A stretch of 64,000 nt of DNA, from positions 19,344,001 to 19,408,000 of the forward strand of contig NC_135254.1 of the NCBI RefSeq assembly GCF_964204865.1, read 5' to 3'. Position 1 is the first letter of the stretch; every line of letters begins with the position of its first letter. A program made the translations under genes and the position numbers. This document shows, piece after piece, positions 9,085-41,300 of the stretch. Below the pieces are notes generated by a model. That model saw only the letters and a list, made by a program, of their open reading frames with translations. It was not told the DNA's origin and did not search any database. The DNA comes from Styela clava. Its lineage: Eukaryota.

Positions 9085-9846
9085 ATCTGAAACGTGTAAT
9101 GTTTTTTTTGTGCAAACAACTTTTTACAGGGTGTCTCAAAATGTCGTTTCCTACTTGACTCACGTGTCCCACTCACCACACATGTCCCACTTATTTCCAT
9201 TATATCGTTATTATTGAAGTGTTTCCGTTTCAACCCAAAAAATGTTTATCCAGAGAAATGATGCATGCGCGGCAATTTTCGTCAGCATTTAATTTTATTA
9301 AAAATCATGCTTTGACTTTAGATGCACGCTTTATTCACCTTTGATTCTGGATTTGGCATAACAATCACAGGAAATGGTTACAAAGACCACGCCATGTGGA
9401 TCGAAATAGACGAGTAATCGTAGATTTGATTTCGTTGATTTGCTTTCGTCGTATCAAATTAATTCAATACCTGGCTGATTGGCGTTGATAAGATGATGTA
9501 ATTTTATCTTCGTAAACAATACAAATGGAACCTATTCGTCAACGCAATATAGATGAAATATTTTGTCTTTGCCCATTTGTATATTTATGATTGGAAAATA
9601 CAGAAAATCGGCGGTTACCAATCTTTGGCGATCTTGTTACATACCGATTCTGCGTGCATAAGAGAAAACCTATTCTCTCAAACACATTTCTATCAATAGA
9701 ATCAGAGATTTTTGTTATCGACCGATTTGAAATTTGCCCAGATCAAATATTTTCAATAATAGTCTTTCATTGTCTCAGTCGATATTTAGGGATACTGGTG
9801 TAATTCATCAAATTTCAATTTCATAATCTTTCAAGATCACAACAAT

Positions 9847-10122
9847 AACAAGAGAGCTATGTGCAAATATATGGACACGTACCGCCACATAGTGGCAAAT
9901 TTTGATGACGTCATAGCACACACAAAAATGTATCCCATGAAATAAATAAAAATAATAGCCTTCTGGCGAAGAATTTAATCTTCAAGCACTGAAAATTCTA
10001 AAGCAATTGGTCCAGTAATCAAAGGGAAAAGCGGCTTTTTCTGTGACAAAGAACAAGAAGAAGAACATAAAAAGAACATTGGTATTAAAACGATCCCAAG
10101 GTCCACTTACCAATGTCCAATA
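9847..10122 (+). repeat. Dispersed repeat (AACAAGAGAGCTATG family), copy 2; possibly Helentron-associated (HINE/DINE-like)
   Basis: Homologous to 620-812 (-). It includes a short AAG/AAC microsatellite near its 3' end. The family assignment is inference. Confidence 0.65.
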
Positions 10123-11198
10123 ATATAAAAATCTAGTTAAAATATATTTCAAGCGTTTTACGTAGTTTGAAACAGTGGTCGGCACTCGGCAACCATCGGG
10201 AAGCAGTGAAACATCATACCGTTAGAGGCAGTATGGCCAGGATATTTGCTTATCTTAAATTTGAACACGGTATAATGAAATGATACAGGTTTACGCAAAA
10301 TGGTCAAATGGAAATTTATCGTTAATCAATATCGAACATTAAAATTCACTTGCGTTATACAGTTGAGTTGCACATTCAAGTTGTAAACGAAGTGTGTTTG
10401 AAGGGCGGTGCGCAAATAAATTTAGTTTCGAACTGGCCCGCTAATTACTGACGCCTGGTTTAAAATAATCGATCGGTACATTACTTTCTGGAACTAACTC
10501 ATCTAACTGCATAAGCGATGCCTGAGTCAAAAAATAACCGATTGATCATTGAACGACATTGTTCAATGGTTGTTTCTATTTGGAATATCTTTATTAGGTA
10601 ATAATCAGGCGTCAGTTTAGCTGTAAAACTGTATTGCATTAGGCACGAAAACTGCCCAGGAAAAGTAGGCTACCATGTTCATAAGTACATGTATTCATTT
10701 TAAAATTTCTTGATTTTGTGCGTAATGAATCACTACAGAATCTGGTGTGTCTAAAAAATGTCGTGTGACACTTGTTCCTTGACAAGTGGGACACAACATT
10801 TTTGAAACACCGCTTTTTACAAGCGCCGGATATCGATCACTAAAATGCGTGAGTGTTGAGCAACCGACATAAGTAAGTTTTTTGTTAGAGTGGGCCACAA
10901 GTAGGATATCATATAATAACTGTTACCCTGCTTTTTGCCCAACCGGTAAGTTAAAATGGCTCGTGCCGCGAATTTAAATATATACTGTATATATAAGTAA
11001 TGGCCTTCTAAGGACCATTTCTATACTAAGTTCTTCCATCGATTGGTCTATTATTCTCGAAGAAATCGTATTTTTTATAACGATAACAATCAACCCACGT
11101 TGTATATTTTTACGTTGTATATTGTATCAGAAATTTTTACGCAGTATTTTATTTCTAGACTACCACTTGGAGATACTTGACATATCCAGAACTCAATT

Positions 11199-12628
11199 TT
11201 ATGTTTTCGAAAGTTGTTTTCTTCCATCCATTACTTTTCTGACCCCTATGGCGATGCCGGTCGAGAAGATGAGAGAAGCGCCAATCAAACTTAAATATGA
11301 AGGGACATCACCAAGAAATGTAACCTGTCAAAATTTTCAAAATTTCAGATTTGTTGTATATACATGTTGCTGTTTTATAGGGGTATGGTGGTAAGACAAA
11401 ATTGTAAATAGAAATTGTTTCGCAGACAGTTCTGTTTAAAATTCAGCATCCTATATCTTCATCTACACAGCAGGGGTGTGCAAACTGCGGCCCGCGGGCC
11501 AAATGCGGCGCACGAGAAAAAATTGTGCAGCCTGCGGAGAAGTGCCAAATTTGAATGGTATGCGGCACGCGAAACGAGTTTTTAATTCGATTTAATCTGG
11601 TCCAAATTCTTATCTATGCCTATGATATTACAATGCCCTAACACCAAGCTCATGCGAAGAAAACAGCGCATGTCACAAGATCAATAACCAAGAATGTCTG
11701 CCTGCAACTACTAGAAAGCCTATGTTAAATAAAGGTGAGGCCCGCGTTTCACCCATTTGGCCCTCCTGTAATAAAGGTTGCACACCCCTGACCTACAGCT
11801 AAAACTGGTTTTATCATGTCGTGATTTACATTGTATAATCTCATATCTTACCTGCATAATGTAGACAAAAACAATCTGGATTGATCGAAGAACGACAATA
11901 ATTCCTGCTCGCTCTCTTTGCAAGGCGATTGTGACAAGAAACTGTCCTAAATTTGCAATTATTCCAAAAGAAAACAACAGGGGTAAATCATTCCAGCACG
12001 GGTAATTGAATTCTCCACCTGCAGCCAAGATTACGAGGCACACGAGTCCACCGCTAAAGCTGTAATATGTGATGTGAAGAGCCGGATGTGTTTCTCGTCC
12101 GAGTTTGCGAACAGCTATGATTGACAAAGCCATGCATAGCGCGGACAACAGTGCAAAAATAACTCCAGACAAATTTGTTTCAGTCTCGTAGCTCACAGTA
12201 AACAAAAATGATGGTCTTACAATGAAAACAACGCCCGTGAGAGCAACAAACGAAAAGATAATTTCGTAGATAGATAAATTCTCCTTTAACAGAGTTCTTG
12301 ACAGAAATGGCACCATAACCATGCCAAGGTACGAAATAGTGATTGCGTTTCCTGCGGTAAGCTTATCTGCTGCTAAATATAAAAACATCATTCCCGATGA
12401 ACCTAGTCATCCTCTAATCCACAGTAGGCTTTTTAGTCCAGTCGGTCCTGTTATATCAATTTCATCATGCTTATACTGCACGAATGGTAAAATTGTCAAA
12501 AACTGCACTACGCAGCGAGTAAGACTTATTTGGACTGGATGCAAATCAATCATCTTCACAAATATTAACATGGTAGCATATAACAAAGCTGAGAGGAGAG
12601 CACAAAAAATGCCGACGAATGAAGTCAT
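11199..12628 (-). pseudogene. SLC35G/EamA (DMT superfamily) transporter copy A with one in-frame TGA (pseudogene, null allele or readthrough gene)
   Basis: Exon 1 is 12628-11852 (777 nt; CAG|GTAAG) and exon 2 is 11324-11199 (VTFLGDVPSY...KQLSKT*), the same lengths as in copy B. ORFs 12407-12628 and 11720-12391 are in one frame, separated only by TGA at 12409-12407 (codon 74). Confidence 0.8.
11471..11790. mobile_element. hAT (Charlie-like) MITE in the SLC35G copy A intron
   Basis: Perfect 13-bp TIR CAGGGGTGTGCAA / TTGCACACCCCTG, with GCGGCCCGCGGGCC subterminal. It is absent from the copy B intron (189 vs 527 nt). A related copy lies at about 40575-40800. Confidence 0.85.
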
Positions 12629-12750
12629 GTTTTTTTCCTTGATAAATATGTGTTTATTTATAGTTCTCTCTCAGGTTTTCAATTTTGACGTGGATTTGCG
12701 TCACGTAAAATCAGACAGATCCGTGCTCTTTTTATTTTTCAAGATAATGG

Positions 12751-12760
12751 TTTTATATAT
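12751..12760 (-). promoter_or_regulatory. Candidate TATA box of SLC35G copy A
   Basis: ATATATAAAA about 125 nt upstream of the ATG, conserved at 16731-16740 in copy B. Confidence 0.4.
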
Positions 12761-13914
12761 TTTTTATTACTGTGAACTAAAAATAAAAAAAAAACAAGGA
12801 CAGTTGAGAGCATAAAGAACGGCATTTATCTAATATACACCACGCATATCCCAGAGCGTTTGACACTTTAGGGCAATATTGATGTAGGAGTAATTTGCGA
12901 TCGAACTGTCGATGAAATATTAGTTATACATCGGCCAATTCACTGGGTAAACAATTGAAGGACAAAAGGTTGTGTTAGTAATAATATTGGTAAACCAAAA
13001 CGACAAAGCTGTTTTGACACTTTGATAAACCTTGACAAACCTATTTTTATTTTCCATCTTATGTCGTCACTGAATCCGAAGTACAAGATTGTTCATTGAT
13101 TGGTGCTACGTTTTTTTTTTTTTTCTAAAGGTTCCGAAGGGACTTGTATTATTGACATAAATATTGCAATATAATTTGCTGATAGAAAGATATTTGTTCA
13201 TCTCTGATTGCGGAAAGCATATGGGAAGGCATTTTGGCAGTCAACAGTTAGAGTATACTGTATACATAATATATCGGGCGGCTGTACGCATCAAAATATA
13301 AATGGGACTACCGTACTACCGATTCAGTGGCGACATGGAACCCAGTAAAATAGGTTTGTCAAGCAGTCTAAATAACTTTGTCCTTCTGGTTTGACTTTAT
13401 TATTACTAACACTATCTTTTGTTCTCCAAGTGTTTCCCCAGTTGAAATGAACTCTGAATCGAAAAATCATAAACCTTAGACACAAAGATTCTCTGGCAAA
13501 TTTATCTTTACCTCTCAACTTAAGCAATTCTAATCGCGTTTATGCATGCTACACTCCTGCAGCTATGGTTGTAGAGCATACCTGAATCACTGTTTTCTAC
13601 CTAGTAATCGTGTAGGCCTATTGTACAAATATTAATGTACAAATTAAATCCGACATTTTAGGCATGTTTGCAAACATAGACAAAAAATAAATAAACCTGC
13701 TTTTCAATATGTATCGGATAATGAGATACAAGGAAATTGCTATACTCGTATTGAGTACATTGGATTAATTTTGAATAAGTATTTATAACTGGATATGTTT
13801 CACCATGCTTTAAAAGTCTTCATGCATCTGATTAGATGGCAAAACAAGAATGCAAATCATTGTGTTGCATTAGGCTACAGGCTATACGCCCTATGAGCAA
13901 GGAGAAGTTTTTTG

Positions 13915-14480: not shown

Positions 14481-15517
14481 TAAATATGCCGCATTGATGC
14501 ATTTCAAATATAAAACAAGTCTTGTTTGATTTTCTAAAAACCTTTAGTTCAGCGCAAGTTACACATGTTAAAATGTAACTCATATTTATTCACGCTGTTT
14601 TATCAAATCTGCTACCACTTTACTTGATTTATGACTCGAATTTCTTTCATCCTTTTCTTACACCCTTCTGTTATTCTGGTTAATCGGAGATTTCTGTCTA
14701 AATTTCTTTCTATGACCCATTCTATATTTTATTACCATTTTCTGCATAAAATATCACTATCATTTTTTTTTTCTTCTTTATTAATAAAAACGATAATTTT
14801 TTCACAATTAATGACATTTTTTACAAACTAGAAAATTAGAATCTCTCTTTGCGAAGTTTATATTTGTAAATGGAATATATTCCACATAATAAAACACAGT
14901 TGATACCCTGCTATGGAAAACCCTTATAAAACATCTCTACTTGTTAAATTGAGGTTTAATCCATATCCTACAGTTAGCCATGCAATAACTATTTTCAAAA
15001 ATTGTTGCACAAATTCACAGTGGTAAAATAAATGTAGGCTAATACAGTTTTGACATACATATCATAAAATGTACACTTTGGTGTCTTATTTATTTTACAT
15101 AATAGGCTATTTGTCGGTATTGCTATCAAAGCAAATTTCACACGAAAAGAGCGGAGCCGTGACTCTATTGAACCATAAAAAACATTTTCATATAGTAGCA
15201 GCTAATTTTCAAAGTTCTCGCACAATCCGGTTGACCAGGTTTCTTTTTCGGTGGGTGGCGAAATTTCAACAGCACGAAGCTTATCGTAAATATATCGGGA
15301 GGTTTTACCATTATTTTTAATAATTTTCGACTATACTAAAATGGGAATTGAAATTTTTGATAATTTTGTTTTCCATGTTTGTATACACAATATATAATTT
15401 TTAGATACGATTGCATATCATAATAATCAGAAAAACAGTAATAAGGGCTTTTACAAAGTCTTTATTCTTTAGAGACGACCACTTGGAGATTCTTGACATA
15501 TGCAGAACTCAATTTAT

Positions 15518-16609
15518 TTATGTTTTCGTAACTCGTTTTCTTCCATCCATTACTTTTCTGACGCCTATGGCGATGCTAGTAGAGAAGATGAGAGAAGCGC
15601 CAATCAAACTTAAATATGAAGGGACATCACCAAGAAGTGTAACCTGTAAAAAAATTCGAATTTCAGATTTTTATGCATGTTGAAGTTTTATGGGTGTATG
15701 AAAGTCTTACGAACAGTTCTGTTTGAAATTCAACTTCCTATGTCTTTATCTCCAACATTAAAGGAGCAAGCTACTTGCTAATAGGACTGGTTTGCTCATG
15801 TCGTGATTACATAGTATAATCTCATATCCTACCTGCATAATGTAGACGAAAACAATCTGTATTGATCGAAGGACGACAACGATTCCTGCTCGCTCTCTTT
15901 GCAAGGCAATAGTGATAAGAAACTGTCCCAAATTTGCAATTATTCCAAACGAAAACAGCATGGGTAAATCGTTCCAACACGGGTATTTAAATTCTCCACC
16001 TGCAGTCAAAATTACCAGACACGTGACTGCACCGCTAAAGCTGTAATATATGATGTGAAGAGCCGGGTGAGTTTCTCGTCCGAGTTTTCGAATTGCGATG
16101 GTTGCCACAGCCATGCATAACGCGGACAACAGTGCAAAAATGACTCCAGACAAATTTGTTTCATCCTCGTAGCTCACAGAAAACAAAAATGGTGGTCTTA
16201 CAATGAAGATAACACCCGTGAGAGCAACAAACGCAAAAATAATTTCATAAACAGATAAACTCTCCTTTAACCATATTCTTGACAGAAATGGCACCATAAC
16301 TATGCGAAGGTACGAAATAGTGATTGCGTTTCCTGCGGAAAGCTTATCTACTGCTAAATATAAGAACATCATTCCTGATGAACCTATGAATGCTCTAACC
16401 ACCAGTAAGCTTTTTAGTCCAGTCGGTCCTGTTATATCAATTTCATCATGTTTATACTGGATGAATGGTAAAATTGTCAAAAACTGCACTACGCAGCGAG
16501 TAAGGTTAATTTGGACTGGGTGCAAATCAATCATCTCCACAAATATTAACATGGTAGCATATAACAAAGCTGAGAGGAGAGCACAAGAAATGCCGACGAA
16601 TGAAGTCAT
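15518..16609 (-). CDS. Solute carrier family 35 member G-like (EamA x2) transporter, copy B, 300 aa
   Basis: Exon 1 is 16609-15833 (259 codons, CAG|GTAGG) and exon 2 is 15643-15518 (VTLLGDVPSYLSLIGASLIF...KT*). The product has about 10 hydrophobic segments and EamA/SLC35G-type motifs (TRCVVQF, LKESLS, GVIFIVRPPFLF, IAIRKLG, ALQRERAG). Confidence 0.9.
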
Positions 16610-16730
16610 GTTTTTTTTTCCTGATAAATATCTGTTTGTTTTTTATTCTCTTCCAGGTTTTCAATGAAATTTGACATGAATTGGCATCATGTAAAATCTG
16701 ACAGATCCGTGCTCGTTTTCAGAATATTGG

Positions 16731-16740
16731 TTTTATATAT
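16731..16740 (-). promoter_or_regulatory. Candidate TATA box of SLC35G copy B
   Basis: ATATATAAAA, positionally conserved with copy A. Confidence 0.4.
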
Positions 16741-17812
16741 TTTTTATTCCTTTGAACTAAAACTAAAAAACAAGTTCAGTTGAGAGCATAAAAAACGGCA
16801 TTTATTGAATGTACACCAGCCATATCCAAGAAACAGAAATTCTGAAACTACATCACAAAAGTTTGACACTTTGGGGCAATATTGATGTAGAAGGAATTGG
16901 CGATCGAACTGTCAATGAAATATCAATTATATATACATCGGGCAGTTTTCGGGCAATTGACTGGGGAAATTCTTGAAGGACGAAAGGTTGTGTTAGTAAT
17001 AATAAAGTTTAACCAAAATGATAAAGCTGTTTAGACACTTTGATAAACCTTAAAAACCAATTTTCATTTTCAGAGGTTTCCATCTTATGTCGTCACTGAA
17101 TCGGAAGTACAGGGCCGTTAATTGATTGTCGCGTCGTTTTTTCTTTGAAGGTTCCGAAATGACTTGTGTTATTGACATGAAAATTGCAAGCAAATTTGCT
17201 GATAGAAAGATATTTGTTGATCTTTAAAGACGGAAAGCATATGGGGAGGCCTTTTGGCAGTCAACAAATAGAGTATACTGTATACATATCAGGCCGCTCG
17301 GCGCATCAAAATATATAAAATATTTAGCCAGCATGTGAGTACTATGCCGAGCGTTTTTGATAAGTCCCGAAGTAATGTTATCACGTGTGTACTGCAGTAA
17401 GCCTACAAGTCGAGTTGCTTACCACCAATTGGACTAAGTTGCGGTCACCGTTACAAGTGTTTACGTGCCTTCCGATACATGGATCGCATCATAAAAATAT
17501 TATTCAATGTTTACCAAACCAGTGAATCCTGTCGGAACTGTAAGAACGAACACAAGCGACGTGTCAGACTTGATTCATTTATCTCATATTAAAAAAAAGT
17601 TCTAAAGTACTGAAGCCTTTTTGCTATGGTGAGCATTGATATCTCTTATCAGTATTGATTCATGACATTTGGAAATATATCAAACTTTGCCTGTGTGCAG
17701 TAAAATTACTTTGATAAACTGAACTCTGAATCGTAAAATCATAATCTTTACACAGGAAGATTCTCGCCGACAAATTTATCTTCACTCCCCTCAACTTAAG
17801 CGAAGCCAAGCA

Positions 17813-19805: not shown

Positions 19806-21800
19806 TTCATCAGATGATAATATAAAACTAATCGATGTAAAAAAGAAAAAATTTATAGTCGACTTGGGATTTTGCTAACGGTGATATCTTGAAAATAATC
19901 TTGAGCGACTAAAATTTAAACAGTTACCAAGATCGCAAAAATGTGAGTTAATTTCTATCATAATCGGGCAGTATACCATCTATTTTAATGTACGCAGATT
20001 GCAGTATTTTAGAGAAATAATATATTTATTTTATTGTAAGTAGGCGCAATGGCGAGTTACGTTGAAAATACTTAAATTAATATGGATGATTTTGAGTGAC
20101 AGAAAATTCATCATTGCTGAAAAAATCGGCAATTTTAATCAATGGCATAATCGCGAGCAAAGACTGTTTTGATCTGAATTTCCGTTTCCAATTTCAAACA
20201 CAATAAAATTTACTGGAAATAAAAAAATAATAAAACTAAAAAGTTTGGGAACCAATGCGTTAGCTTAGACCAGGGGTCAACCCTAAATACAAGAGGGCCA
20301 GAAAGAAACAATTGGGTAAAACCGCGGGCCGCACCTTTATTTAACATAGGCTTTCTTGTAGTGCGGGCTCAATAATTTTGGCACGCTTAGCAAAAATGCT
20401 TAGCACGAAAATTCATATCAGATTGGATAATACCACAGGGTGTTTTCATTGGACCATATCAGTTCTTGAATATTTGGCAAACAAATAAAGCATTTATAAT
20501 CCAGTAAATGCTTTCTTAAATACTCTCTAACATTCTTCCTGAGTTTTAGCATGTATTTAATCCTGATATTGATCGGCCTAAAACTCAAAATAATCTTGCA
20601 ATGATCTCTTCAAATTCGGATGTCCTCGTCAATATCCATGGCTTTGCAAAAGCTTCAACTGTTGCTTACCCAGTGAAATTTTTGTTTGTTTTCATCTGTC
20701 GCGTTGATCTCGCAGCTACGACGACATGTTTCCATAAAACCAGCGTCTGCTGGTCCAGGACCTTTTAGAAGCAGAGATGAAACCTTTCATCTCGTTATCA
20801 GACGAACTCAATTTTGAGTTGATAATGACTTTGACATTCTGAAGTCTTAATTAATCATAAACTGACCCTTTTGACGGTTTTTACAAAATATGAGAAGTGG
20901 ATTGTATATACATGTCGTGTATAAACAATATCGGTGCAATTACCACTGATAATGCGTTGGTTTTTAATAGCATTATTTGAATATTTTGTAATTGCCATTG
21001 GTTTTCAAAGACAGAAAAAAATTCACCGCTATCACAAAAGATACAAGACCCAATCTGATAAAAATTAAAGCATTACTTGAAATGCATATTTAATGATTTG
21101 TAGATTCAGAAAAGCTTTGATTGATGTTGATGAGACGTAGATAACCTTAAAATGAAATATGAATGAAATACTTGGGGTATTTACCTGATAGACACAAATA
21201 GAAAGTCAAATTAAATCATAAAGCAACAAAAGTAAGATCACTGTACTAATGAGTTTCAAATGGAGTTTGTTAACTGTCAGTTTGACACACAATACCAATC
21301 GAGTCTTTCACGGTAGTTCATTTCATTTTACAATACAAATATTTTGTAAATAAGCTAAGGTTGAGTCGGTGTCTATTTCCTGAGTCAAAAAATTGTTATC
21401 TTTCTAACCGAAATTAAATTGCCAATTTCTGAACTCAATTACAGATTTTATTAAATGAAAGATAACGAAAAAGTAAATGCCGATTCAATCATCAATACCA
21501 CCAAGCCACAATAGATATTCAGTATATATACAAATATATGATATTTTGAATATTTCCTCTCATTTTTAGGTGTAGTTTAGGCCACTTATTAGAAACTCCG
21601 TGCGAATGAAAAACTGTCTACTATTTCGTTTCCATGTATTAATTTGGCATATAGTAAAAGCTATGAAACGGATCTTTACTTCTTCCTACACAGGTTATAG
21701 TGGCGAGGATAAAGTTCAAGTAAAGAAATGAGAGCACTCCTTTCGGCTATAGGATAACTTGAATAATGTTACAACATCATCCGCAAAATATTTTAAATTA

Positions 21801-38300: not shown

Positions 38301-41300
38301 TGTGAGAGTACACACGAATGCTTGTGCATACTGTTTTAATACAAGATTGTCTGACACTCCCAGTTTCTCTTACATACTTATGTAAACAGATATGTTTAGA
38401 TATATTCAGATATTATATATGATGCAATGTCGCAATGACAATTTTATAATCTCATGTTATGTTGTACGTCCTGAACAGCATGAGCATATATAAGTAAATA
38501 TAAGCATATATATAAGTAAATACAAGGGCAATGAGGAGAATTGAAAATTTGAGTTTAATTTATTGGTTACAATACATTTGCTTGCCTATGTACTTTGTTT
38601 GTCATGTTTTCTGTAGCATACTACAAATTTTTTTTCTAACTTCTAATTATCCCCTTTTCATTTTTTTTCAATAGATGATAAAGATCAGAGTGAAGAAACA
38701 GATAATTCAAAGCCTGATAAAACACTGGAAACAATAACAGAAAATTCAACAACTCCAAACGGAGATCTAGATGCCAAAGTAATTCCTTGTTAATTCATAT
38801 TTATTCTTCGAGTGTTCATATAAGAATCGCACACATTATATATTCCATTTTACATCGCTTTATAATCATTTATTCCAAGCCAATATTTCTTTTAAATTTA
38901 CTGTTTTAATGCTAATGTACTAATAATTAAGTTGTATCTGTCTTATCGGTTTGTCAACATGTATATAGCATTTATGTATATACTTTGTGTATAAAAATTC
39001 TGTCCTATATTCCTATGTTACATATTTACCACTCATTTAGGGTTTGAGAAATTAGGTAAGAGTTTCTTCAGTCAGGGTCGTGTCAAACTTTTCTGCTGCT
39101 CGGGGTGAATTTCTAATAATGATGCCTAGCTTCAAAAATAATTTGTAATTTATTATTGTTTGAATCATCAAACAAGCTAGAAACTCATCCCTATAACATG
39201 CTGCTCCTATTATCCCTTCTATACAAGCCCCTGGGGCCAGTCTTTCTAAGCCAAAACCACCACCAAGTAGATAACAATATAGAGAAAATATGCAAATCAT
39301 TTTTTAATTTCAGAAATCACTGTCTCTTGATGGAAAACCGCCAATAGTTTCGAAAGACGATTCAACGCCAGTGTCGCAAAATTTATCAATATCACTACTT
39401 CAATCCATCGATTCAAAAACTCCACTAAGCACTCATCATCAATTACAACTGAGTCAACAAAAAATACAACAGGCTGAAAATCAGGCTCAAATGGCTGTAG
39501 CACAGGTTAAAAATTGTCAGAGTAGCTACCGGTAATTCAAAAAGCTGTAGAATTCCTGTAGGGATTGCCAAGACTGAATAATTGGATGTGATTCCATGAA
39601 TCAGTGAAAAGTAGATTTTATTCGTACCGTTTTAACTTCCCATCTTGAATCTTGATCTTAAAATTTGTTTGAAATTTGTGACGTTTTTCTCATTTTTTCT
39701 GTAATTTTTTCGGATAATGGACTAATTTTAAAGTTATTTTTTTATCGATTTAATATTGATTTTTTCAAGATTTTCTCTAAGTATATTTTTTATTCCAGGT
39801 GCAATTATTGAAAGATCAACTTCTAGCTGAAACAAGTGCTCGTATGGAAGCGCAGGTAATGCTTTAATTTTCTATCTATCAGTGTATTTTTGTTTATCTG
39901 ATGGAAATTATGATACCGCTTAAAACATGGAAAACTGAAATGAAAAAGCAGTAATTTTGATTATACTTCCTTTATCGAATAGCAAAAATATAAAATTTTA
40001 CTTAAACCAAATTTTTTTAACATCTCTTGGGAATATGCCTATGAAATTTTGCTACTTTTGTAATATAATTTAATGTGAAATTAAATCAGTTCTGCTCAGA
40101 GATAAATTTTGAATTTGCATATTTGAAGAATGCATCTTGGCAACACATGATATTTTTCTGCTTAAAAATTTGCATAAGCGTTAATTTTTTATGCAAATAT
40201 ATGGGAAGGAAAAAATTCTCAATGATATTAAAAATAAATTAGACATTTGAATAAATCTTTAAAATAGCAAAATAACTTCGCTGCTTCTGATATCTACTAA
40301 GTTGACGTGCGATTCGAAACAGCAACAACTCAGACATTTTTAAAATTTGCTGGTATTCGGATTTAACTCCGGATTTGTATCACCATAACTTGATTTACAA
40401 CTTAAGGACTTGTGTTGTACAGAACTGGTATTCTGATACTTGGGTCCAAAAATCACCTTCAAATTCAGTAGTCATCACAGTTGTTCAAATGTTTTGCAAT
40501 AGCCTTTGTTATTCCAAACAACTTTGTTGAAGGTCTCATTTACGTCTGTGTTTTGTATCCAAATGCGACCCTCAAGGAAATCTTGTGTGGCCCGCGGAGA
40601 AGCGACACTTTTGAGTGGTATGCAGCCTGCGCAACAAGTTTTCAATTTAATCTAGTATGTGCTAGTAATTCCGATTACTTTGCGTTGCAATGCCTAGATC
40701 TGAGCTTGTGCAAAGCGAACAACGCACATCACAAGATCAATAACCAAAATTTTTGTGTCTACAACTACCAGAAAGACTATGTTAAGTGAAGGAGCAGCCT
40801 GCGGTTATATCTAGTTATTTGTATCTGACCCTCGTGTTGCAGGTCCCTCATGGTTTAGTCTATTCAAATTTCATTTTCAAGGCTCGCAATCATCAACTTT
40901 TACTTCAAAATCGAGATCTCCTTCAACAAATGACAGAACTTGTCGCAAAACTTTCGGAAGTCGAAGCCAAACTAAACAATGTAGAAATGGAAGACTCATT
41001 CTCACTTGGACTAAGTAAAATAATAGTTGATGCTACAACACCTGCCAGTGGGACTGTTGATGCATCTGGTATCATGGATACTGATATGACAAAAGTAATT
41101 CTTTTTAATTTGCCTTTTTTTATTTTACAATCAGTGCGTTGGGATGGTCGTGAGTGTTTTTTTACAGATGGTTATGCACAGTGCATTTTTTTGTATACCT
41201 TTTGCTCTGAACAAGAGCACAAACTGTCTTATTGGCTATCTCATTCATTGCTATAATATGAAACTTTCGACATTACTTATATTAAATCAGAGTAATTTTG

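What the first reader, a model, noticed from the sequence alone, without database searches (positions are those of the whole stretch)
12395..12425. Single internal stop in SLC35G copy A sits in the UGA-CUAG readthrough motif (possible pseudo-pseudogene)
Seen: the - strand reads AGA GGA TGA CTA GGT TCA TCG GGA ATG ATG. It is the only lesion in 300 codons, and exon lengths, splice sites and the terminal stop are preserved. Established: UGA followed by CUAG is the best-characterised animal stop-codon readthrough context. Inference: copy A could yield low-level full-length transporter, or reinitiate at the ATG ATG five codons downstream. Caveat: CTA GGT may simply encode a conserved Leu-Gly, so a recent TTA>TGA null mutation or a sequencing error explains the data equally well.
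Basis: partly seen in the sequence, partly recalled or inferred. Interest (0 to 1): 0.75.

Follow-up and report, generated by a model that had tools for sequence, protein, structure and literature searches.

The report
Young nonsense allele in duplicated transporter
One of two neighbouring sea-squirt transporter genes carries a single premature stop codon in a sequence context known to be leaky, but it looks like an ordinary, recent knock-out mutation, not a proven case of a gene that works through its stop.

Summary
Copy A of a two-exon EamA/SLC35G1-like gene (Styela clava, minus strand) has one in-frame TGA at window 12409-12407 (codon 74 of 300), followed by CTAG. Everything else matches intact copy B.

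The genome has six paralogues, and the other five have a sense codon there (Phe x4, Leu TTA x1). The TGA is most simply one step from TTA. The CTA-GGT behind it is an inherited Leu-Gly that predates the stop.

Copy A is still transcribed and correctly spliced in one RNA run, at about one sixth of copy B's contig depth. No SECIS and no downstream RNA structure were found. Branch dN/dS is underpowered: omega A is 0.52 against 0.32 for B, and neither omega A = omega B nor omega A = 1 is rejected.

No listed read or contig piece bridges the TGA, so the base call and its population frequency remain unchecked.

Best reading: a young Leu-to-stop null or hypomorphic allele in a redundant tandem duplicate. 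A few per cent readthrough is plausible from the context but is neither shown nor shown to be selected. NCBI already models copy A as a 221-aa protein starting at the ATG ATG.

The parts
11852..12628 (-). Copy A exon 1: 259 codons, ATG at 12628, CAG|GT donor after 11852
   Evidence: G000:C5:19355852-19356628, 86% aa identity to copy B, '1 TGA' inside. EamA PF00892 hits on both pieces.
12407..12409 (-). In-frame TGA, codon 74, the only stop in the reading frame
   Evidence: The other five paralogues have TTC, TTA, TTC, TTT and TTC here.
12403..12406 (-). CTAG directly 3' of the TGA (CTA Leu plus the first base of GGT Gly); the full context is GGA TGA CTA GGT
   Evidence: It is the only CTAG in copy A's coding sequence. 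The inferred A/B ancestor already had CTA GGT.
12386..12391 (-). ATG ATG (codons 80-81), the start of NCBI's 221-aa model of copy A
   Evidence: P0001 begins MMFLYL.... It lies inside predicted helix 3 (residues 63-89) of the copy B model.
11325..11851 (-). Copy A intron, 527 nt, GT..AG, phase 0
   Evidence: An RNA contig joint 11322->11850 'skips 527, CT..AC (cut +2)', depth 5.5, in run X6.
11471..11790 (.). High-copy MITE-like insert in copy A's intron, with 16-nt terminal inverted repeats; absent from copy B's 189-nt intron
   Evidence: arms 11471-11486 and 11775-11790, 94% complementary. (depth about 5000 against about 15 in X1, many loose ends). (other copies in the window).
11199..11324 (-). 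Copy A exon 2: 41 codons plus TAA, after a ...TTGACAG acceptor
   Evidence: It matches the C-terminus of NCBI P0001.
15833..16609 (-). Copy B exon 1, intact, 259 codons (the comparison copy)
   Evidence: EamA PF00892 at E 6.8e-28 in two stretches. It is NCBI P0002.
15518..15643 (-). Copy B exon 2: 41 codons plus TAA; intron 15644..15832 (189 nt)
   Evidence: RNA joint 15641->15831 'skips 189', depth 32.3, in X6.

Best explanation
Copy A is the tandem duplicate of an intact EamA/SLC35G1-like ten-helix transporter gene in Styela clava. It has acquired one evolutionarily young nonsense substitution, most simply Leu TTA>TGA at codon 74, inside predicted helix 3.

The gene is otherwise untouched and still transcribed and spliced. 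Most ribosomes should stop after 73 residues, giving a two-helix fragment. The mRNA carries a stop 555 nt upstream of its only exon junction, so it should be an NMD target. That fits its roughly six-fold lower contig depth than copy B.

The CTAG after the stop is the inherited Leu-Gly coding sequence, not a signal that evolved for recoding. Because UGA-CU(AG) is intrinsically leaky in fungi and mammals, perhaps around a per cent of ribosomes may read through and make full-length protein. That would make the allele hypomorphic and not strictly null. There is no evidence that this leak is needed or selected, and five intact paralogues exist.

Shown: the sequence, the gene structure, the paralogue states, the transcription and splicing, and the absence of a SECIS. 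Inferred: youth of the mutation, NMD, and the level of readthrough.
For: There is a single TGA in 300 codons, and start, donor, acceptor and terminal stop are as in copy B.

Six family members occur in the genome and only copy A has a stop (1 of 6). At that column the others read B TTC, C TTA, D TTC, E TTT and F TTC. Gly follows two codons later in 6 of 6.

Parsimony with C as outgroup gives 16 nonsynonymous and 15 synonymous changes on the A branch, against 21 and 19 on B. In the 73 codons before the stop, A has 0 nonsynonymous and 2 synonymous changes. There are no indels and no second stop.

The ML branch omegas are A 0.52, B 0.32 and C 0.33. That is a modest, non-significant rise, as expected if only the last part of the branch was unconstrained.

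A spliced copy-A contig of depth 5.5 is seen in run X6, against 32.3 for copy B.

The reference haplotype also carries a derived Thr at codon 112, where runs X1 and X5 have the ancestral Ile. So copy A varies among samples.

On context leakiness: UGA-CUA alone gave 1.5% readthrough and UGA-CUAG genes 3.5-31% in HEK-293T cells (PMC4132726). UGA-CU is leaky in fungi and mammals (PMC4207609 abstract).
Against: The TGA was not seen in any independent read or contig. The listed pieces stop at 12350 and 12324 and restart at 12607 and 12442 in X1 and X5. The raw-read run X11 has zero depth there.

No run tallied a C>A change, which is what the ancestral TTA allele would look like. Polymorphism is therefore not shown either.

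Omega A = 1 is not rejected (p 0.18, and 0.32 for the post-stop part). Omega A = omega B is not rejected either (p 0.42, and 0.11 post-stop). 'Young' therefore rests mainly on the lack of further lesions and on an assumed indel rate.

The stop fell on the only site in the gene that gives UGA-CUAG, about 1 of 130 possible nonsense changes. That is what one would expect if leaky nonsense alleles survive better.

The origin of the codon is equally parsimonious as TTC>(TTA or TGC)>TGA in two steps.
Confidence: 0.6

Rival explanations
1. Pseudo-pseudogene. The TGA is fixed, or kept at high frequency, and is read through often enough that copy A supplies working full-length transporter. Selection would then still act on the whole reading frame, and possibly on the context.
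For: The core context UGA-CUAG is exact. The next base, G, also matches the OPRL1/Getah UGA_CUAGGC hexanucleotide in 5 of its 6 post-stop positions. The -1 codon GGA is the one glycine codon that did not abolish readthrough in human reporters. The transcript is made and spliced. There is no second lesion, and A has 0 nonsynonymous changes before the stop. Omega A = omega B is not rejected. The stop sits at the only CTAG in the coding sequence.
Against: The stop is absent from 5 of 5 other paralogues, and CTAG occurs in 1 of 6. The context predates the stop. Glycine at -1 is among the lowest-readthrough amino acids. There is no stimulatory downstream structure: z is +1.20 and 181 of 200 shuffles fold as well. 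The post-stop omega of A is 0.62 against 0.23 for B. Copy-A RNA depth is about one sixth of B's. Five intact paralogues make the loss cheap. No orthologue, Ribo-seq or peptide data could be reached.
Confidence: 0.13
2. Assembly or base-calling error. The real gene has a sense codon, most likely TTA, and copy A is simply intact.
For: No independent read or contig was shown to cover the site. A search with the 73-aa N-terminal piece found nothing. NCBI's protein comes from a 24.9-Mb contig that is probably this same assembly, so it is no second witness.
Against: No run tallied a C>A change at any listed place (X1, X5 and X11 have no C>A at all; X6's only C>A is at 16105). Bin 12379-12575 has depth 6.15 in X1 and 6.51 in X5, with no listed other letter at 12407-12409, although 18 rows were hidden. 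From general knowledge, a lone substitution error in a polished chromosome-scale assembly is much rarer than a real heterozygous or fixed variant.
Confidence: 0.08
3. An N-terminally truncated 221-aa protein, started at the ATG ATG five codons after the stop by reinitiation or an internal transcript, is the functional product. This is how NCBI annotates the gene.
For: NCBI model P0001 starts exactly there and uses the same exon 2. The -3 purines give both ATGs an acceptable context. The ATGs are only 15 nt past the stop.
Against: The product would begin in the middle of predicted helix 3 and lack helices 1-2 of the first EamA repeat. The model is of low confidence (pLDDT 63.5), but its ten helices fit the family. 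Before the ATG ATG the mRNA carries the original start and six further ATGs, with a 74-codon ORF. From established knowledge, that is long for efficient reinitiation. The RNA contig at 12540-12693 shows that the transcript includes the original start. The 73 upstream codons show 0 nonsynonymous changes on the A branch, so they were not free to drift for long.
Confidence: 0.04
4. The UGA is recoded by design, either as selenocysteine or by A-to-I editing to UGG (Trp).
For: UGA is the Sec codon. No RNA contig covered the site, so editing cannot be excluded.
Against: No SECIS appeared among the 4 weak Rfam matches (all E of 2.1 or more, far below gathering) in 9500-12800 on both strands. None of the 5 other paralogues has Cys at this column; all are Phe or Leu. 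The 141 nt around the stop fold no better than shuffles (z 0.22), so there is no obvious editing duplex.
Confidence: 0.02

Closest known systems
Programmed UGA-CUAG stop-codon readthrough in vertebrate genes (OPRL1, OPRK1, AQP4, MAPK10, MDH1, LDHB, VDR)
   Same: The core signal is identical: UGA followed at once by CUAG. Here the sequence is UGA CUAGG, sharing 5 of the 6 post-stop bases of OPRL1's UGA_CUAGGC (PMC4132726 passages; preprint 10.64898/2026.07.14.738498).
   Different: Those are natural terminal stops whose readthrough adds a short C-terminal extension, and the stop and context are conserved across vertebrates. Here the stop is premature (codon 74 of 300), absent from every paralogue, and its context is an inherited Leu-Gly. 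The -1 codon is glycine, a poor P-site residue for readthrough.
Olfactory receptor pseudo-pseudogene Ir75a of Drosophila sechellia (Prieto-Godino et al. 2016, Nature 539:93; recalled, since the paper is not held; the reference entry was seen)
   Same: A premature stop in an otherwise intact, transcribed gene of a multi-copy membrane-protein family, proposed to give full-length protein by readthrough.
   Different: As I recall it, that case has a fixed stop and a demonstrated, neuron-specific functional product. Here neither fixation nor any product is shown, and the tissue of expression is unknown.
Ordinary segregating or recently fixed nonsense (loss-of-function) allele in a tandemly duplicated gene
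   Same: A single-step nonsense change with an intact neighbour 4 kb away and four more paralogues. Transcription is retained at a lower level, there are no secondary lesions yet, and other nonsynonymous variation segregates in the same copy.
   Different: Nothing defining differs. The only unusual point is that the hit fell on the one site in the gene that creates UGA-CUAG.
Human SLC35G1, a chloride-sensitive citrate transporter (PMC11542916; title and start of abstract seen in the listing only)
   Same: NCBI names copies A, B and C 'solute carrier family 35 member G1-like'. Copy B has two EamA (PF00892) stretches.
   Different: No substrate can be inferred for the sea-squirt copies. Orthology to the human gene was not tested here.

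Membership tests
Programmed UGA-CUAG readthrough | UGA stop followed immediately by CUAG | tested here: met
   GGA TGA CTA GGT at 12412..12401 on the minus strand.
Programmed UGA-CUAG readthrough | Stop codon and its 3' context conserved among relatives | tested here: not met
   0 of 5 other paralogues have a stop at the column, and CTAG is present in 1 of 6. Orthologues in other species could not be reached.
Programmed UGA-CUAG readthrough | Protein-coding constraint continues downstream of the stop | tested here: inconclusive
   Post-stop omega on the A branch is 0.62. Omega = 1 gives p 0.32 and omega A = omega B gives p 0.11. There are no frameshifts or further stops in 226 downstream codons.
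Programmed UGA-CUAG readthrough | Permissive -1 codon and extended context or structure | tested here: inconclusive
   The -1 codon is GGA. Glycine is among the lowest-readthrough amino acids, but GGA is the exception that does not abolish it in human reporters. There is no stable 3' structure (z +1.20).
Programmed UGA-CUAG readthrough | Readthrough product demonstrated (reporter, Ribo-seq or peptide) | not testable with these tools
   No translation data could be reached.
Pseudo-pseudogene | Premature stop fixed in the species | tested here: inconclusive
   No listed piece from 4 runs bridges 12407-12409, and the raw-read run has zero depth there.
Pseudo-pseudogene | Gene still transcribed and processed | tested here: met
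   Run X6 has a contig with copy A's 527-nt intron removed at GT..AG (depth 5.5), and a contig over the start codon at 12540-12693.
Nonsense-mutation pseudogene or null allele of a duplicated gene | Disabling lesion in a recognisable ORF, with an intact paralogue present | tested here: met
   There is one TGA at codon 74. Copy B is intact 4 kb away at 86% identity, and four more intact exon-1 copies exist.
Nonsense-mutation pseudogene or null allele of a duplicated gene | Relaxed selective constraint on the disabled copy | tested here: inconclusive
   Omega is 0.52 for A against 0.32 for B, with LRT p 0.42. Parsimony counts are 16N:15S against 21N:19S, Fisher p 1.0.
EamA / SLC35G transporter (drug/metabolite transporter superfamily) | Two EamA repeats, about ten membrane helices | tested here: met
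   In copy B exon 1, PF00892 hits at E 6.8e-28 in 2 stretches. Copy A's pieces give 9.6e-6 (26.4 bits, below the 28.2 cut-off) and 2.8e-18. The AF2 model of copy B has ten helices at pLDDT 63.5. NCBI's name is SLC35G1-like.
Selenoprotein | SECIS element in the 3' UTR, and Cys or Sec homologues at the UGA position | tested here: not met
   No SECIS match at E up to 10 in 9500-12800. The column is Phe or Leu in 5 of 5 other paralogues.

The most novel reading that the evidence does not exclude
Copy A is a tunicate pseudo-pseudogene. The UGA at codon 74 would be fixed, and the inherited CUAG context would let enough ribosomes through (inserting, as I recall, Trp, Cys or Arg at a Phe/Leu position of helix 3) to keep a low-dose transporter under selection. 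On this reading, nonsense mutations survive preferentially where the local code happens to be leaky.
Probability: 0.12. Interest if true: 0.6.

Novelty: new member of a known kind. Interest (0 to 1): 0.3.

Why it matters
If it is the ordinary young null allele it appears to be, it matters little beyond annotation. NCBI's 221-aa model hides the fact that the gene is a 300-codon ORF with one stop.

If the stop proved fixed and leaky, it would be a natural experiment on how sequence context buffers nonsense mutations in duplicated genes. As far as my one search shows, it would also be the first such case in a tunicate. In one search, 5 papers held 'readthrough', 'premature stop codon' and 'ascidian', and by title and abstract start none is about an ascidian gene.

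The case is cheap to settle. One amplicon across individuals and one reporter construct would do it.

Tried and rejected
**Reads.** Read laying was meant to confirm the TGA and test polymorphism. It showed splicing of both copies. No listed piece bridges the stop, the raw Hi-C run had zero depth there, and 18 'other letter' rows and 904 pieces were hidden.

**Independent protein fragments.** The search with the 185-aa post-stop piece gave only 3 NCBI S. clava proteins from 428 candidates. The search with the 73-aa pre-stop piece gave no candidate. So there are no transcript-derived ORFs from other samples, and the length window of 0.55-1.75x limits what could be seen.

**Metagenome pattern scan** across the stop: 0 matches.

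**dN/dS.** Pairwise NG86, parsimony polarisation and my own three-branch codon ML all ran. My first impression from parsimony, that neutrality is clearly excluded, did not survive the ML model: omega A = 1 has p 0.18. I dropped that claim.

**SECIS and selenocysteine:** rejected.

**Downstream stimulatory RNA structure or editing duplex:** none.

**Structure.** The AF2 model of copy B is of low confidence (pLDDT 63.5, pTM 0.55). I used only its helix boundaries and ran no fold search.

**Papers.** Prieto-Godino 2016 is not held. Supplementary figures and tables of PMC4132726 and of the 2026 preprint were not seen. They could give the exact readthrough value for a GGA -1 codon.

**Exons.** Orthology to human SLC35G1 and substrate were not tested. 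The exons were never joined for a search. Each exon was searched or counted apart, and the joined step was left out.

Full report
**What is there**

The window is G000:C5:19344001-19408000.

On the minus strand lie two tandem copies of a two-exon gene.
- Copy A: exon 1 at 12628..11852 (259 codons), a 527-nt GT..AG intron, and exon 2 at 11324..11199 (41 codons plus TAA).
- Copy B: 16609..15833, a 189-nt intron, and 15643..15518.

Copy B's exon 1 matches Pfam EamA (PF00892) at E 6.8e-28 in two stretches. NCBI calls copies A, B and C 'solute carrier family 35 member G1-like'. An AlphaFold2 model of copy B is of low confidence (mean pLDDT 63.5, pTM 0.55), but it shows the ten helices expected for this superfamily. 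Helix 3 spans residues 63-89.

**The observation**

Copy A reads ...CTG TGG ATT AGA GGA TGA CTA GGT TCA TCG GGA ATG ATG... The TGA is at 12409..12407, codon 74. It is the only stop in the 300-codon frame.

**Where the stop came from**

The genome holds six family members, and only copy A has an internal stop (1 of 6). A codon alignment gives, at the stop column and the two following codons:

| Copy | Codons |
|---|---|
| A | TGA CTA GGT |
| B | TTC ATA GGT |
| C | TTA CTG GGT |
| D | TTC GTA GGC |
| E | TTT GTT GGA |
| F | TTC TGC GGA |

A and B are sisters (dS 0.23), and C is the outgroup (dS about 0.5). The simplest history is Leu TTA in the A/B ancestor, as in C, followed by TTA>TGA in A. 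A two-step route from TTC is equally parsimonious over the whole family.

The next codon was already CTA in the A/B ancestor: A has CTA, B has ATA and C has CTG. Gly follows in 6 of 6 paralogues.

**Is the context more than chance?**

The CTAG behind the stop is the only CTAG in copy A's coding sequence. None of the 129 other possible single-base nonsense changes, 47 of them to TGA, would have produced UGA-CUAG. Taken at face value that is roughly a 1-in-130 coincidence, and it fits the idea that leaky nonsense alleles survive longer.

It is a post hoc number, though. Among many single-stop genes a per cent or so will show it by chance.

**Expression**

Run X6 holds a contig in which exactly copy A's intron is removed (joint 11322->11850, skips 527, CT..AC with cut +2, depth 5.5). 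The 282 exon-1 bases of that contig carry 4 other letters. Another contig at 12540-12693 covers the original ATG. The same run holds copy B's spliced contig at depth 32.3.

So copy A is transcribed and correctly spliced, at roughly one sixth of copy B's contig depth. Contig depth is a poor measure of expression. The lower depth fits nonsense-mediated decay, because the stop lies 555 nt upstream of the only exon junction. That is an inference from the exon-junction rule established in vertebrates. A weaker promoter would explain the lower depth equally well.

**The base call itself**

This could not be verified.
- The listed pieces end at 12350 (X1) and 12324 (X5), and restart at 12607 and 12442.
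- X6's pieces are 11850-12131 and 12540-12693.
- The raw Hi-C reads (X11) have zero depth in the bin.
- 904 pieces and 18 'other letter' rows were not shown.
- No run tallies a C>A change at a listed place on copy A, which is what the ancestral TTA allele would look like on the plus strand.
- Bin 12379-12575 has depth 6.15 (X1) and 6.51 (X5), with no listed difference at the stop.

That is weak support for the TGA, no more. At 12294, X1 and X5 both read the ancestral Ile (ATT) where the reference has Thr (ACT, codon 112). Copy A therefore varies between samples, and the reference haplotype carries at least one further derived amino-acid change.

Protein searches for transcript-derived fragments from other samples found none. 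A metagenome pattern scan also found none.

**Selection**

- Pairwise A-B omega is 0.30.
- Parsimony with C as outgroup gives 16 nonsynonymous and 15 synonymous changes on A, and 21 and 19 on B (Fisher p 1.0).
- Before the stop, A has 0 nonsynonymous and 2 synonymous changes, against 8 and 3 on B.
- My three-branch codon ML model gives omega 0.52 for A (0.62 after the stop), 0.32 for B (0.23) and 0.33 for C (0.36).
- Neither omega A = omega B (p 0.42, and 0.11 post-stop) nor omega A = 1 (p 0.18, and 0.32 post-stop) is rejected.

What does argue for a young lesion, or a tolerated one, is the absence of any second stop, frameshift or splice-site loss. The A branch is about 0.2 neutral substitutions per codon. 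If I assume an indel-to-substitution ratio near 0.1 (general knowledge, not measured here), neutrality over the whole branch would be expected to give several more disabling hits.

**Other recodings**

No SECIS appears among the four weak Rfam matches in 9500-12800. The column is Phe or Leu, never Cys, in the paralogues. Selenocysteine is therefore rejected. The 110 nt after the stop fold worse than shuffles (z +1.20), and the 141 nt around it fold at z 0.22. There is neither a readthrough-stimulating structure nor an obvious editing duplex.

**How leaky could it be?**

- In HEK-293T reporters, UGA-CUA alone gave 1.5% readthrough. Natural UGA-CUAG genes gave 3.5% (MDH1) to about 31% (OPRL1, whose context is UGA_CUAGGC). 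Deleting CUAG abolished readthrough (PMC4132726, passages).
- UGA-CU is leaky in fungi and mammals (PMC4207609, abstract). Extending this to a tunicate is a reasonable inference.
- A 2026 preprint reports that the -1 codon has the strongest upstream effect. Glycine and proline give the lowest readthrough, and all glycine codons except GGA drop it to background (10.64898/2026.07.14.738498, section 10 read whole).

Copy A has GGA at -1, so the context is permissive but probably at the low end. I did not see the per-codon values, which are in figures and supplements.

**The annotated alternative**

NCBI models copy A as a 221-aa protein starting at the ATG ATG. That product would begin inside predicted helix 3 and lack helices 1 and 2 of the first EamA repeat. 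The mRNA carries the original start, a 74-codon ORF and six further ATGs ahead of it. I consider it an annotation convenience, not a likely working transporter.

**Verdict**

The most likely reading (about 0.6) is a young Leu-to-stop allele in a redundant tandem duplicate. It may still be polymorphic, and it may leak at the per-cent level. It is a new member of a known kind. It becomes interesting only if the stop proves fixed and conserved in sister species.

Noticed in passing
window 11471-11790: A 320-nt MITE-like element with 16-nt terminal inverted repeats (94% complementary) sits in copy A's intron and is absent from copy B's. Its contig depth is about 5000 against about 15 for flanking DNA in run X1, so it is a very high-copy family in this genome. 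Related copies lie near 40559-40806 and 20260-20362.
   Followed up: partly
window 16378-16395 (copy B codons 72-77): Intact copy B has a burst of derived changes exactly around the position where copy A has its stop: W>V (two bases), I>V, G>A at an otherwise invariant Gly, L>F and L>I. That is five amino-acid changes in six codons, while A and C keep the family consensus. The cause is unknown: a multinucleotide mutation, a small conversion tract, or selection on helix 3.
   Followed up: no
window 12294 (copy A codon 112): Runs X1 and X5 both read the ancestral Ile (ATT) where the reference has Thr (ACT). This is a segregating nonsynonymous difference in copy A.
   Followed up: partly
window 14786-15636 and 15831-16900: Copy B's RNA contigs in run X6 imply a 3' UTR of about 730 nt and transcript sequence running at least 290 nt upstream of its ATG. 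The 'goes back 3970' joint is the part of that contig beyond 16900 landing on copy A's paralogous upstream region, not a real rearrangement.
   Followed up: partly
L003 (G000:C5:19056378-19060157): NCBI's isoform X2 of paralogue C (P0003, 269 aa) ends ...IMQTNGNKTKTS and not with the conserved last helix. A conserved exon 2 (VAFLGDVPSYLSLIGAALIF...) does lie 138 nt downstream of exon 1, so the isoform would lack helix 10.
   Followed up: no
run X5 ('organism B'): A run labelled as a different organism holds copy A DNA at about 99% identity (for example 1 other letter in 231 bases) but almost nothing over copy B. This may be low, patchy coverage of sea-squirt DNA in a mixed sample. I did not pursue it or try to identify the sample.
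   Followed up: no
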